The notes below the pieces were generated by a model. It searched no databases, was not told where the DNA came from, and saw nothing but the letters and a program-made list of their open reading frames with translations. A stretch of 63,733 nucleotides of DNA, filler included, from Octopus bimaculoides (lineage: Eukaryota): the NCBI RefSeq assembly GCF_001194135.2. It is 8 parts of 7 records of this genome, joined end to end, with 100 filler letters (N's around TTAATTAATTAA, not from the genome) between each part and the next. Parts side by side here need not be neighbours in the genome. Positions count along the whole stretch, not along the records: positions 61,512 to 63,733 come from NW_026320595.1; 7 more parts are not named here. One strand, written 5' to 3'. The position numbers and the translations under genes were made by a program. Positions 61,512-63,733 of this stretch are shown here, piece after piece; within the stretch, counting starts at the first letter, position 1, and the number at the start of each line of letters is the position of its first letter.

Positions 61512-61641
61512 ACTTATTCTTTGTAAGCCTGGTACTTATTCTATCGGCCTCTTTTGCCGAAGCGCTACGTCACAGGGACATAAACACACTAACATCGGTT
61601 GTCAAACGATGTCAGGAGGACAAACACACACCCACACACAA

Positions 61642-61690
<49 letters not shown>

Positions 61691-62010
61691 TATATATGTT
61701 TGTATGTATGTACATATGTCCGTATGTATGTATGCATGGATGTATGTATGTAAGTATGTGTGTGTGTGTATACATGTGTAGTTGTGCTTGGGCTTGCCCT
61801 ACCAGGACCATCTCTCAGCAAACCGGGTGTTGGTTTGTTTACATCTCCATAACTTAGTAGTTTAACAAAAAAAAGGCCAATGGAACATGTAGCAGACTTT
61901 GAAAAATAATCTTAAACCCTGGAGTCGATTTGTGCAGCTAAAAGCCATTAAGGCAGCGCTCCAGCTTGGCCGCCATCCAATGACTGAAGCAAGTCAGATA
62001 TAGAATATTA
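61512..62010. mobile_element. SINE family A fragments (61512-61630 minus; about 61810-62010 plus, diverged)
   Basis: TTGTAAGCCTGGTACTTATTCTATCGGCCTCTTTTGCCGAA and GCGCTCCAGCTTGGCCGCC...AATGACTGAAGCAAG. Confidence 0.7.
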
Positions 62011-62110
62011 AAAAAAAAAAAATTTTTTAAATTGTTATATTTCAAAAAAGAAAATGACAACAGTAAAAGAAAAAAGATTTAACAAGAGCCCTTAAAATAG
62101 GGATCAATTC

Positions 62111-62116
62111 TTTATT
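62111..62116 (-). terminator. Candidate polyadenylation signal (AATAAA) for the DD3-3-like transcript
   Basis: TTTATT on the plus strand, just beyond the end of the 79-bp array. Inference only; other AATAAA-like sites exist. Confidence 0.25.
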
Positions 62117-62199
62117 TCAAAATAAATGAGACCCTGCTAAGACAATTTTGCGAACTCCTTGTCCAAACATAAAAATAAGGAGTTTTAAAGGAACTCTAT

Positions 62200-63180
62200 T
62201 TGGGTTCTTGTGTTAGTAAATTTTATTACTTTGGGCACACATCTTCTGCACAGAAAAATTAGGGGTTACAAAAGCGAACACTACTAGGGCCCTGTTGATA
62301 AATTTCATGTTTAGCATACACTTCTGATGTTCGGAAAAATCAGGGGTTATAGAAGAAACCCCGTTAGGCCCCTGTTAGTCAACTTCTTGTTAAGGGTACA
62401 CTTCTAATATGCAGAAAATTAGGTGTTATAAAGGAAAGTTTTTTTGGCCCCTGTTAATACATTTCTTGTTTAGGGCACACTTCTAACACACAGAAAATTA
62501 GGGGTTGTAAAGGAAAGCCCATTTACCCCTTGTTAATACATTTCTTGTTTAGGGCACACTTCTNNNNNNNNNNNNNNNNNNNNNNNNNNNNNNNNNNNNN
62601 NNNNNNNNNNNNNNNNNNNNNNNNNNNNNNNNNNNNNNNNNNNNNNNNNNNNNNNNNNNNNNNNNNNNNNNNNNNNNNNNNNNNNNNNNNNNNNNNNNNN
62701 NNNNNNNNNNTGTTAATACATTTCTTGTTTAGGGCACACTTCTAACATAGGGGCTATAAAGGAAAGCCCATTTACCCCTTGTTAATACATTTCTTGTTTA
62801 GGGCACACTTCTAACATACAGAAAATTAGGGGTTATAAAGGAAAGCCCATTTACCCCTTGTTAATACATTTCTTGTTTAGGGCACACTTCTAACACACAG
62901 AAAATTAGGGGTTGTAAAGGAAAGCCCATTTACCCCTTGTTAATACATTTCTTGTTTAGGGCATACTTCAAAAATACAAAAACAATCAGGGTTATAAAGG
63001 AAAGGCCTTCTGGCCCCTGTTAGTAAATTTCTTTATGAGGATACACTTCTAATATCCAGTAAATAAAGGGTTATAAATAAAAGATCTTTTGACCCTTGTA
63101 AATATTAGTAGTTGTTTTGGGTTCACCTCTGATTATAATATAAAAAAGGGATCTTCTTCACATATAAAAAGATTCAGGTT
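62200..63180. repeat. Tandem array of about 79-bp units (roughly 12 units, including a gap)
   Basis: The anchor TGTTAATACATTTCTTGTTTAGGGCA recurs at 62452, 62531, 62711, 62780, 62859 and 62938 (79-bp period, one 69-bp unit). Units diverge toward both edges. Confidence 0.93.
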
Positions 63181-63186
63181 TTTCAT

Positions 63187-63391
63187 TTATTTCACCATAA
63201 TTACACCCTTTTGGGCCCTGTTTGTGAACTGGTTGTTACGGGTGCACATGTAGTTATAAACCCCTTTCTTTATACGGAGTAGCACACCCGGATAGGAAGC
63301 TGGTGCTTTGTTCAGTAAATCGTCCATTTCAGTCTTCTTCTCCAAACTGTCTTGTACAAGAGTGTTCGGGCATTGCGACGCTTTCAGACAC
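63187..63391 (-). CDS. Terminal coding exon of a protein DD3-3-like gene
   Basis: Strong acceptor TTCTCATCTCTTTCTGTTTCAG|G. 67 open codons CLKASQCPNTLVQDSLEKKTEMDDLLNKAPASYPGVLLRIKKGVYNYMCTRNNQFTNRAQKGVIMVK then TAA. The APAS..G.LLR.KKG.Y.YMC.RNN.F.NR.QKG motif matches my recollection of the DD3-3 family C-terminus; not database-verified. Confidence 0.75.
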
Positions 63392-63700
63392 CTGAAACAG
63401 AAAGAGATGAGAAGTTATTCAACATGTACACATGAAGCCCACATGTGTGTGTGTGTGTGTGGCATCAGGAAGGTTGCTTCGTGAACCTATGGCTTCAGGT
63501 TTCAGTCCCAATGCTTGACACCTTGGGAAAACAGAAAAAAAACAAAAAAACCTTCTGTTGTAGCCCAGGGACAATCACTGTCTTGCAAGTGGATTTGGTA
63601 AATAGATGAAAAGTGTATGGAAGCTCATCATATACATATATATATATAGACACATGTTTATATATATATATATACACACATACATACATGTATATATATA

Positions 63701-63733
<33 letters not shown>

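What the first reader, a model, noticed from the sequence alone, without database searches (positions are those of the whole stretch)
62200..63262. 79-bp tandem array in the putative 3' UTR is homologous to the gene's own last codons
Seen: coding 63217-63252 aligns ungapped to array unit 62371-62406 at 28/36. On the minus strand that unit reads *KCTLNKKLTNRGLTG against the coding YMCTRNNQFTNRAQKG. The array starts right after the stop, has homogenised central units and diverged edges, and a candidate AATAAA follows it. Inference: the conserved C-terminal motif seeded a gene-derived minisatellite of about 1 kb. It could act as a repeated regulatory or decoy element, or promote unequal crossover with the CDS.
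Basis: partly seen in the sequence, partly recalled or inferred. Interest (0 to 1): 0.72.

Follow-up and report, generated by a model that had tools for sequence, protein, structure and literature searches.

The report
Minisatellite copied from a gene's coding tail
A roughly 1-kb run of 79-base repeats just downstream of a DD3-3-like gene descends from a duplication of the gene's last 16 conserved codons, which makes it a tidy but ordinary example of how a minisatellite is born, with no sign of a function.

Summary
A 79-bp tandem array spans about 62168-63147, and an N gap at 62564-62710 lies inside it. Central units are 96-99% identical to each other; edge units are 60-80% identical.

The minus-strand last exon (63391..63187) encodes the family-wide C-terminus of DD3-3-like proteins (LNxAPASY...YxYMCTRNNxFxNRxQKG). 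Homologues match it right to their own C-termini, so the coding sequence is the ancestral copy.

Its 47 nt at 63206-63252 match array unit 62360-62406 at 36/47. The local score is 25. In 1000 dinucleotide shuffles the mean was 11.4, sd 1.5 and maximum 20. In 952 natural 205-nt windows the maximum was 19.

Best reading: an old tandem duplication of the gene's 3' coding tail lay beyond the stop codon and was therefore harmless. Unequal exchange or slippage then expanded and homogenised it into a minisatellite.

Not shown:
- That the array is transcribed. Three AATAAA candidates exist, and one overlaps the stop codon.
- That the array has any function.
- That the unit is absent elsewhere in the genome. 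No close relative of this organism is reachable with these tools.

The true copy number is unknown. This is a real feature of an ordinary kind.

The parts
63187..63391 (-). Last coding exon of a DD3-3-like gene, including the TAA stop at 63189-63187. It encodes (x)CLKASQCPNTLVQDSLEKKTEMDDLLNKAPASYPGVLLRIKKGVYNYMCTRNNQFTNRAQKGVIMVK*. The acceptor AG sits at 63393-63392, preceded by a pyrimidine tract.
   Evidence: Translation. 187 homologues match it as far as their own C-termini. One source names the family 'protein dd3-3-like'. ORFs called on the genomic contigs of several homologues show the same R|C junction.
63206..63252 (-). The coding segment homologous to the array unit. It is the parent copy and encodes YMCTRNNQFTNRAQKG.
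   Evidence: 36/47 identity to 62360-62406, score 25, against a shuffle maximum of 20 and a natural-window maximum of 19. nhmmer gives E = 1.7e-4. The repeat finder lists 63213-63237 as the tenth member of family D5.
63148..63205 (-). The last 5 codons, the stop codon and the first 39 nt downstream. This stretch has no significant similarity to the array on its own. It contains an AATAAA at 63191-63186 that overlaps the stop.
   Evidence: (97 of 500 shuffles did as well).
63093..63147 (-). The most proximal recognisable unit. It is strongly degenerate and carries indels.
   Evidence: score 16; 3 of 500 shuffles reached it.
62711..63092 (-). Right block of the 79-bp array. Unit starts are at 62707 (cut by the gap), 62776, 62855, 62934 and 63014. 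The unit at 62707-62775 is 69 bp long because of a 10-bp deletion.
62564..62710 (.). Assembly gap (147 N) inside the homogenised core of the array. The 33 nt on each side are identical. The true length is either an overlap with nothing missing, or 46+79n bases.
62168..62563 (-). Left (gene-distal) block of the array. Homogenised units start at 62448 and 62527. Diverged units start at 62369 and 62289, with about 1.5 further degenerate units back to about 62168.
   Evidence: (E = 9e-14 for 62168-62274).
62111..62116 (-). Candidate poly(A) signal AATAAA about 50 nt beyond the distal end of the array. A further candidate lies at 62227-62222, inside the distal degenerate units.
   Evidence: These are consensus matches only; whether any is used is not shown.

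Best explanation
This is a minisatellite that was born from the gene itself.

**Origin.** A segment of about 80-110 bp at the 3' end of a DD3-3-like gene was duplicated in tandem. It began at the Tyr-Met-Cys codons of the conserved C-terminal motif and ran through the stop codon into the proximal downstream sequence. The extra copy lay beyond the first stop codon, so the protein was unchanged and the duplicate was free to decay.

**Expansion.** Two adjacent copies are a substrate for unequal exchange and replication slippage. These processes expanded the copy into an array of at least 11-12 units of 79 bp. They keep the central units nearly identical, while the edge units, which take part less often, drifted apart.

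**Present state.** The coding copy was held by selection on the protein. The array copies lost the reading frame; every unit now starts with TAG where the gene has TAC. The array is most likely a neutral, length-variable VNTR with no function of its own.

**Shown and inferred.** Shown: the tandem structure, the homogenisation gradient, significant similarity in the sense orientation confined to the motif codons, and the antiquity of the coding motif. Inferred: the duplication and expansion mechanism, neutrality, local origin, and length polymorphism.
For: **The array and its gradient.** TRF and unit mapping. Central units are 96-99% identical and edge units 60-80%.

**The similarity is not chance.**
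- Score 25 (36/47) against 1000 shuffles with mean 11.35, sd 1.5 and maximum 20.
- 952 natural windows reach a maximum of 19.
- A profile of the units gives E = 1.7e-4.

**The similarity is specific.**
- The rest of the exon (63391..63253) shows none; 235 of 500 shuffles did as well.
- The non-array flanks of the piece score 10-13.

**Direction of descent.**
- The motif YxYMCTRNNNFSNRSQKG ends proteins of 450-950 aa from many lineages.
- The array units carry stops in all frames.

**Register.** In 10 of the 11 distant homologues examined, the best alignment to the array is in the sense orientation and in the same register (TAC ATG TGC ACC CGx AAC...). This includes the degenerate proximal unit.

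**Local origin.** The window's own CDS scores 25, against 11-18 for the tails of 34 other homologues.

**Edge units.** The most CDS-like units are the unhomogenised edge units, 62369 at 73% and 63014 at 63%, against 53-61% for central units.
Against: - The parent copy and the first recognisable unit are not in regular phase. Their spacing is about 108 nt rather than 79, and the 58 nt between them do not match the array significantly. Indels or a longer original unit must be assumed.
- The protein-level signal of the units against the family profile is marginal (E = 0.02-0.07 in a tiny database).
- At sites where edge and central units differ, the CDS agrees with the edge state only 4 times to 2, which is not significant.
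- The register evidence from other homologues is not independent of the window's CDS, because they are homologous to it.
- No orthologous locus or genome-wide copy count could be obtained. Local origin and absence of dispersal therefore remain inference.
Confidence: 0.74

Rival explanations
1. The array belongs to a dispersed satellite or a repeat family carried by a transposable element. It may itself have come originally from the tail of some DD3-3-like paralogue. It happens to lie next to this gene, or was brought there, and did not arise in place.
For: The piece is rich in dispersed and simple repeats. Two inverted, diverged copies of one element lie at 61512-61600 and 61820-61910, and microsatellites are present. 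Whether the unit occurs elsewhere in the genome could not be tested, because the source organism is apparently absent from every searchable collection. The irregular junction with the CDS would fit an independent insertion.
Against: The similarity is in the sense orientation and lies within about 60-110 nt of the very sequence it resembles. It is stronger to this gene's CDS than to any other homologue's (25 against 18 or less). The unit core has no exact match in the JGI metagenome contigs. No called ORF in 5.8 billion proteins shares words with the array's translations, although both of these negatives are weak. No tRNA or Rfam match suggests a SINE.
Confidence: 0.13
2. The similarity is chance. 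An unrelated AT-rich minisatellite happens to resemble the neighbouring coding sequence.
For: The matching stretch is short (47 nt at 77%). The protein-level signal is marginal. The agreement between the edge units and the CDS is weak.
Against: None of 1000 shuffles and none of 952 natural windows came near the observed score (maxima 20 and 19, against 25). The match is on the sense strand, next to the array, and confined to one part of the unit. The same register recurs with the degenerate proximal unit and with the edge units on both sides.
Confidence: 0.06
3. The array is a functional part of the mRNA. It would be a multi-copy 3' UTR element, such as a decoy or sponge for a small RNA or an RNA-binding protein that recognises the motif-coding sequence of DD3-3-like transcripts. 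Homogenisation would then reflect selection as well as turnover.
For: An AATAAA lies about 50 nt beyond the distal end of the array, so a long 3' UTR containing it is possible. The central units are very similar to one another.
Against: There is no evidence of transcription. An AATAAA overlapping the stop codon could end the mRNA before the array. The unit dimer folds no better than shuffles (z = +0.76). There is no Rfam match. The homogenised central units are the least like the CDS (53-61%), which is the opposite of what a decoy for the coding motif would need. Homogenisation of the centre is the expected neutral pattern.
Confidence: 0.05
4. The array is an assembly artefact: a collapsed or misjoined repeat.
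For: An N gap sits inside the array, and its two sides carry identical 33-nt sequences.
Against: Units on both sides of the gap are mutually diverged at 60-80% with distinct indels. An assembler does not invent such differences. Only the copy number and the join across the gap are uncertain.
Confidence: 0.02

Closest known systems
Minisatellites / VNTRs in or just beyond the last exon of a gene, for example the 40-bp 3' UTR VNTR of human SLC6A3/DAT1 (from general knowledge, not tested here)
   Same: Head-to-tail units of tens of base pairs lie downstream of the stop codon. Turnover by unequal exchange or slippage is presumed.
   Different: Here the unit can be traced to the gene's own terminal codons. 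For the classical VNTRs no such coding parent is known. Polymorphism and transcription are not shown here.
Models of minisatellite birth from an initial tandem duplication or slipped-strand mispairing between non-contiguous short repeats, followed by unequal exchange that homogenises the centre and leaves the edges diverged (established repeat-evolution theory, from general knowledge)
   Same: The diverged parent copy still sits at one end. Edge units are degenerate on both sides, and the core is 96-99% identical.
   Different: The founding event is inferred and was not observed. The junction between the parent and the first unit is irregular.
Unstable tandem duplications of coding sequence, for example the 882-bp duplication in exon 5 of sorghum dwarf3 (abstract of PMC12806913, listed)
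   Same: Coding sequence is duplicated in tandem and becomes a substrate for unequal crossing-over.
   Different: That duplication lies inside the reading frame, has two copies and changes the protein. Here the copies lie beyond the stop, number at least 11 and are decayed.
DD3-3 / DD3-3-like glycoproteins (Dictyostelium DD3-3; Halocynthia HrSMLP1, PMC6916515)
   Same: The exon encodes the family's conserved C-terminus.
   Different: Only the last exon is in the piece. Nothing in the literature read here mentions a repeat derived from the tail.

Membership tests
Minisatellite / VNTR | Head-to-tail tandem array with a unit of about 10-100 bp | tested here: met
   79-bp period, at least 11 units, TRF scores 288 and 455.
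Minisatellite / VNTR | Concerted evolution: a homogenised interior and diverged edges | tested here: met
   Central units 96-99% identical, edge units 60-80%.
Minisatellite / VNTR | Copy-number variation among individuals | not testable with these tools
   Only one assembly is available, and it has a gap inside the array.
Gene-derived (CDS-seeded) repeat | Unit significantly similar to the adjacent coding sequence, in the same orientation | tested here: met
   Score 25, against a shuffle maximum of 20 and a natural-window maximum of 19. The match is in the sense orientation.
Gene-derived (CDS-seeded) repeat | The coding copy is ancestral, being conserved in lineages that lack the repeat | tested here: met
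   The motif is conserved at the C-terminus of 187 homologues. No array is found in 39 homologue loci.
Gene-derived (CDS-seeded) repeat | Unit confined to this locus and not dispersed | not testable with these tools
   No genome of the source organism or a close relative can be reached. The negative scans carry little weight.
DD3-3-like protein family | C-terminal motif LNNAPASYxG...YxYMCTRNNNFSNRSQKGxIxV at the end of the protein | tested here: met
   phmmer E-values down to 2e-17, with matches reaching the C-termini. Thirteen columns are invariant. A source gives the name 'protein dd3-3-like'.
DD3-3-like protein family | Full-length architecture (signal peptide, N-terminal conserved region) | not testable with these tools
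   Only the last exon lies within the piece.
3' UTR element | Lies between the stop codon and the poly(A) site that is actually used | tested here: inconclusive
   There are three AATAAA candidates: at the stop, inside the distal edge of the array, and beyond the array. No transcript data are available.
Structured or curated RNA element | Match to an Rfam family, or folding beyond shuffles | tested here: not met
   The only Rfam matches are below threshold and fall on low-complexity microsatellites. Fold z = +0.76.

The most novel reading that the evidence does not exclude
The array is transcribed as part of a long 3' UTR. As a multi-copy relic of the family's most conserved coding motif, it would titrate a small RNA or RNA-binding factor that targets that motif in DD3-3-like mRNAs. 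Array length would then tune expression of a gene family that is linked to self/non-self recognition in ascidians.
Probability: 0.03. Interest if true: 0.6.

Novelty: new member of a known kind. Interest (0 to 1): 0.27.

Why it matters
The parent sequence of a minisatellite is usually unrecognisable. Here it is still identifiable, because selection on an ancient protein motif has frozen it. That gives an outgroup for ordering the units and dating the expansion. It is a clean illustration of birth by duplication followed by homogenisation, and a possible length-polymorphic marker next to a DD3-3-like gene. It does not change what is known about such repeats, and no function is indicated.

Tried and rejected
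- **Word-index protein search with the exon.** It found nothing, so the source organism and its close relatives are not in that collection.
- **Profile search of the same collection, and metagenome loci found with the exon.** These returned only distant relatives, at most 64-67% identical. No orthologous locus could be inspected.
- **Exact scan of the JGI metagenome contigs with a 22-nt unit core.** No matches.
- **Protein search with the array's own translated frames, to catch ORFs called on other copies.** Nothing found. Because the organism seems to be unrepresented, this does not exclude dispersal.
- **Unit profile against 39 homologue loci.** Nothing significant, and no comparable array downstream of those genes.
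- **Family protein profile against the six-frame translation of the array.** The hits fall on the right strand and in the right region but are only marginal (E = 0.02-0.07). They were not used as evidence.
- **Edge-versus-centre polarity test with the CDS as outgroup.** The result was 4:2, too few sites to mean anything.
- **Gapped alignment extending the homology through the stop codon into the proximal downstream sequence.** It looked suggestive, but the stretch is not significant on its own. It is reported as not shown.
- **Rfam, tRNA and RNA-fold checks.** No structured RNA, and no tRNA-derived SINE signature.
- **Pfam and PDB sequence searches for the exon and the family.** No family and no solved relative.

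Full report
**What is in the piece.** The usable sequence is 61512-63733. Tandem Repeats Finder reports a 79-bp period at 62249-62563 (3.9 copies, 76% matches) and at 62748-63077 (4.2 copies, 85% matches), on either side of the N run. I mapped the conserved 41-nt core of the unit. This puts unit starts at 62289, 62369, 62448 and 62527, then the gap, then 62707, 62776, 62855, 62934 and 63014. The spacing is 79-80 nt, except for one 69-nt unit just after the gap. A profile of seven units extends the array leftwards to about 62168 (E = 9e-14). Pairwise alignment shows a further strongly degenerate unit at 63093-63147. With the gap at its nominal length, the array covers about 980 bp.

**The gap, examined first as instructed.** The N run is 62564-62710 (147 N) and lies inside the homogenised core of the array. 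The 33 bases before it are identical to the 33 bases after it (TGTTAATACATTTCTTGTTTAGGGCACACTTCT). If the array is regular, the missing stretch must be 46+79n bases. A run of 147 does not fit that (147 mod 79 = 68). The alternative is that the two contig ends overlap by 33 nt and nothing is missing. So the copy number is a lower bound and continuity is unknown. Reading frame is not at issue, because every frame of the unit on both strands carries stop codons.

**The gene.** On the minus strand an open frame runs from a good splice acceptor (ttctgtttcAG|G, with the AG at 63393-63392) to a TAA at 63189-63187. It encodes CLKASQCPNTLVQDSLEKKTEMDDLLNKAPASYPGVLLRIKKGVYNYMCTRNNQFTNRAQKGVIMVK.
- An exhaustive phmmer search of 1.84 billion representative proteins found 187 relatives, with E-values down to 2e-17. 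Nearly all match as far as query residue 65-67, and many are matched right to their own C-terminus, including full-length proteins of 450-950 aa.
- The tail LNNAPASYxG...GxYxYMC(T/S)RNNNF(S/T)NRSQKGxIxV is close to invariant.
- One member is named 'protein dd3-3-like' by NCBI/UniRef.
- It has no Pfam model and no solved relative detectable by sequence.
- Several homologues are ORFs called on genomic contigs, and they read ...R|C... at the same point. This fits a conserved intron position.

The exon is therefore real, and its last 16-21 codons are ancient.

**The claimed similarity.**
- The best local alignment between the whole exon and the whole array, on both strands, is 63206-63252 against 62360-62406. 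It has 36/47 identities and scores 25.
- 1000 dinucleotide-preserving shuffles of the exon gave mean 11.35, sd 1.5 and maximum 20.
- As a natural-sequence control I used 952 windows of 205 nt from 39 unrelated loci. Their maximum was 19, and the top case was a chance match in a 3' flank.
- The rest of the exon shows no similarity to the array (235 of 500 shuffles did as well), and neither do the non-array flanks of the piece.
- The match is on the sense strand, lies 60-110 nt from the array, and is confined to one 47-nt half of the unit.

I take the homology as established.

**Direction and place of origin.** The coding motif is shared by distant eukaryotes, while the array units are full of stops; each begins TAG where the gene has TAC. 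The coding copy is therefore the parent.
- The window's own CDS scores 25 against the array. The equivalent CDS tails of 34 other homologues score 11-18.
- In 10 of the 11 examined, the best alignment falls on the same codons in the same register. This is not independent of the window's CDS, but it is what descent from a DD3-3 tail predicts.
- The units most like the CDS are unhomogenised edge units (62369 at 73%, 63014 at 63%), against 53-61% for the central units.
- A polarity count at sites where edge and centre differ gave only 4:2 in favour of the edge state. That is too few sites to weigh.

**Where the picture is less tidy.** The 58 nt between the coding copy and the first recognisable unit (63205..63148) comprise the last five codons, the stop and 39 nt beyond it. 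They do not match the array significantly on their own. A permissive gapped alignment can be run through them, but I do not count it as evidence. The spacing from the parent copy to the next motif-like segment is about 108 nt rather than 79. So 'the array starts right after the stop' is only approximately true. Either the founding unit was longer or indels have accumulated since.

**Mechanism.** The central units are 96-99% identical and the edge units 60-80%. This is the classical outcome of unequal exchange or slippage within an array. The most economical history has three steps:
1. A tandem duplication of the gene's 3' end, harmless because the copy lay behind the stop codon.
2. Expansion of that copy into an array.
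3. Continuing homogenisation of the interior.

I found nothing that points to a function.
- There are no Rfam matches apart from sub-threshold hits on the AT/TG microsatellites.
- There is no tRNA.
- The unit dimer folds no better than shuffles (z = +0.76).
- The units have no coding capacity.
- Whether the array is even in the mRNA is open. Minus-strand AATAAA occurs at 63191-63186 (overlapping the stop codon), at 62227-62222 and at 62116-62111.

**What could not be tested.**
- The exon has no near-identical match in the 5.8-billion-protein collection.
- The best relatives, by profile search and in the metagenomes, are at most 64-67% identical.
- A 22-nt unit core has no exact match in the JGI metagenome contigs.
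- No called ORF shares words with the array's translations.

Because the organism seems to be unrepresented, these negatives are weak. Distant homologue loci carry no comparable array. The octopod attribution was not verified.

**Verdict.** The functional suggestions have no support. This is a new instance of a known kind: a minisatellite born by local tandem duplication. Its one unusual feature is that the parent sequence is still recognisable, because it is a strongly conserved coding motif. Interest is modest.

Noticed in passing
window 63186-63191 (minus strand): An AATAAA hexamer overlaps the TAA stop codon (GTG AAA TAA ATG). If it is used, the mRNA would end about 10-30 nt after the stop and the array would lie outside the transcript.
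   Followed up: partly
window 61512-61600 (-) and 61820-61910 (+): Two diverged copies of one dispersed element, about 70% identical over 90 nt, lie in inverted orientation. They flank (AT)n and (TATG)n microsatellites. The + copy is followed by an A-run at about 62008-62024, which is SINE-like. From memory it resembles an abundant cephalopod repeat; this was not tested.
   Followed up: partly
window 62531-62563 and 62711-62743: The 33 nt on each side of the N gap are identical. The scaffolder may have put a gap where two contig ends actually overlap. The N-run length (147) does not fit the 79-bp phase.
   Followed up: yes
window 62707-62775: The first unit after the gap is 69 bp long. It has a 10-bp deletion (ACATAGGGGCTATAAAGG in place of ACATACAGAAAATTAGGGGTTATAAAGG). 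Units 62448 and 62855 share the variants CACAC and GTTGT, while 62776 has CATAC and GTTAT. This hints at a higher-order (two-unit) periodicity.
   Followed up: no
window 63391-63393, and homologues P0002, P0003, P0006, P0007, P0029, P0042: ORFs called on the genomic contigs of several distant homologues read through the same ...R|C... junction (AG|G TGY). The intron before the last exon therefore appears conserved in both position and phase across taxa.
   Followed up: partly
P0015 (2139 aa): This protein carries a type IX secretion C-terminal signal domain (CHU_C) and matches residues 23-53 of the exon in 11 separate stretches. Its Pfam hits are Ig-like (BiPBP_C, Big_12) plus a weak COX2 cupredoxin segment. 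The DD3-3 C-terminal exon may form the last strands of an Ig-like or cupredoxin-like beta-sandwich.
   Followed up: partly
window 63444-63461, 63630-63733 and 61642-61780: A (TG)9 run lies in the intron upstream of the last exon, and long (AT)n/(TATG)n microsatellites lie near both ends of the piece. These produce all the sub-threshold Rfam 'miRNA' hits.
   Followed up: yes
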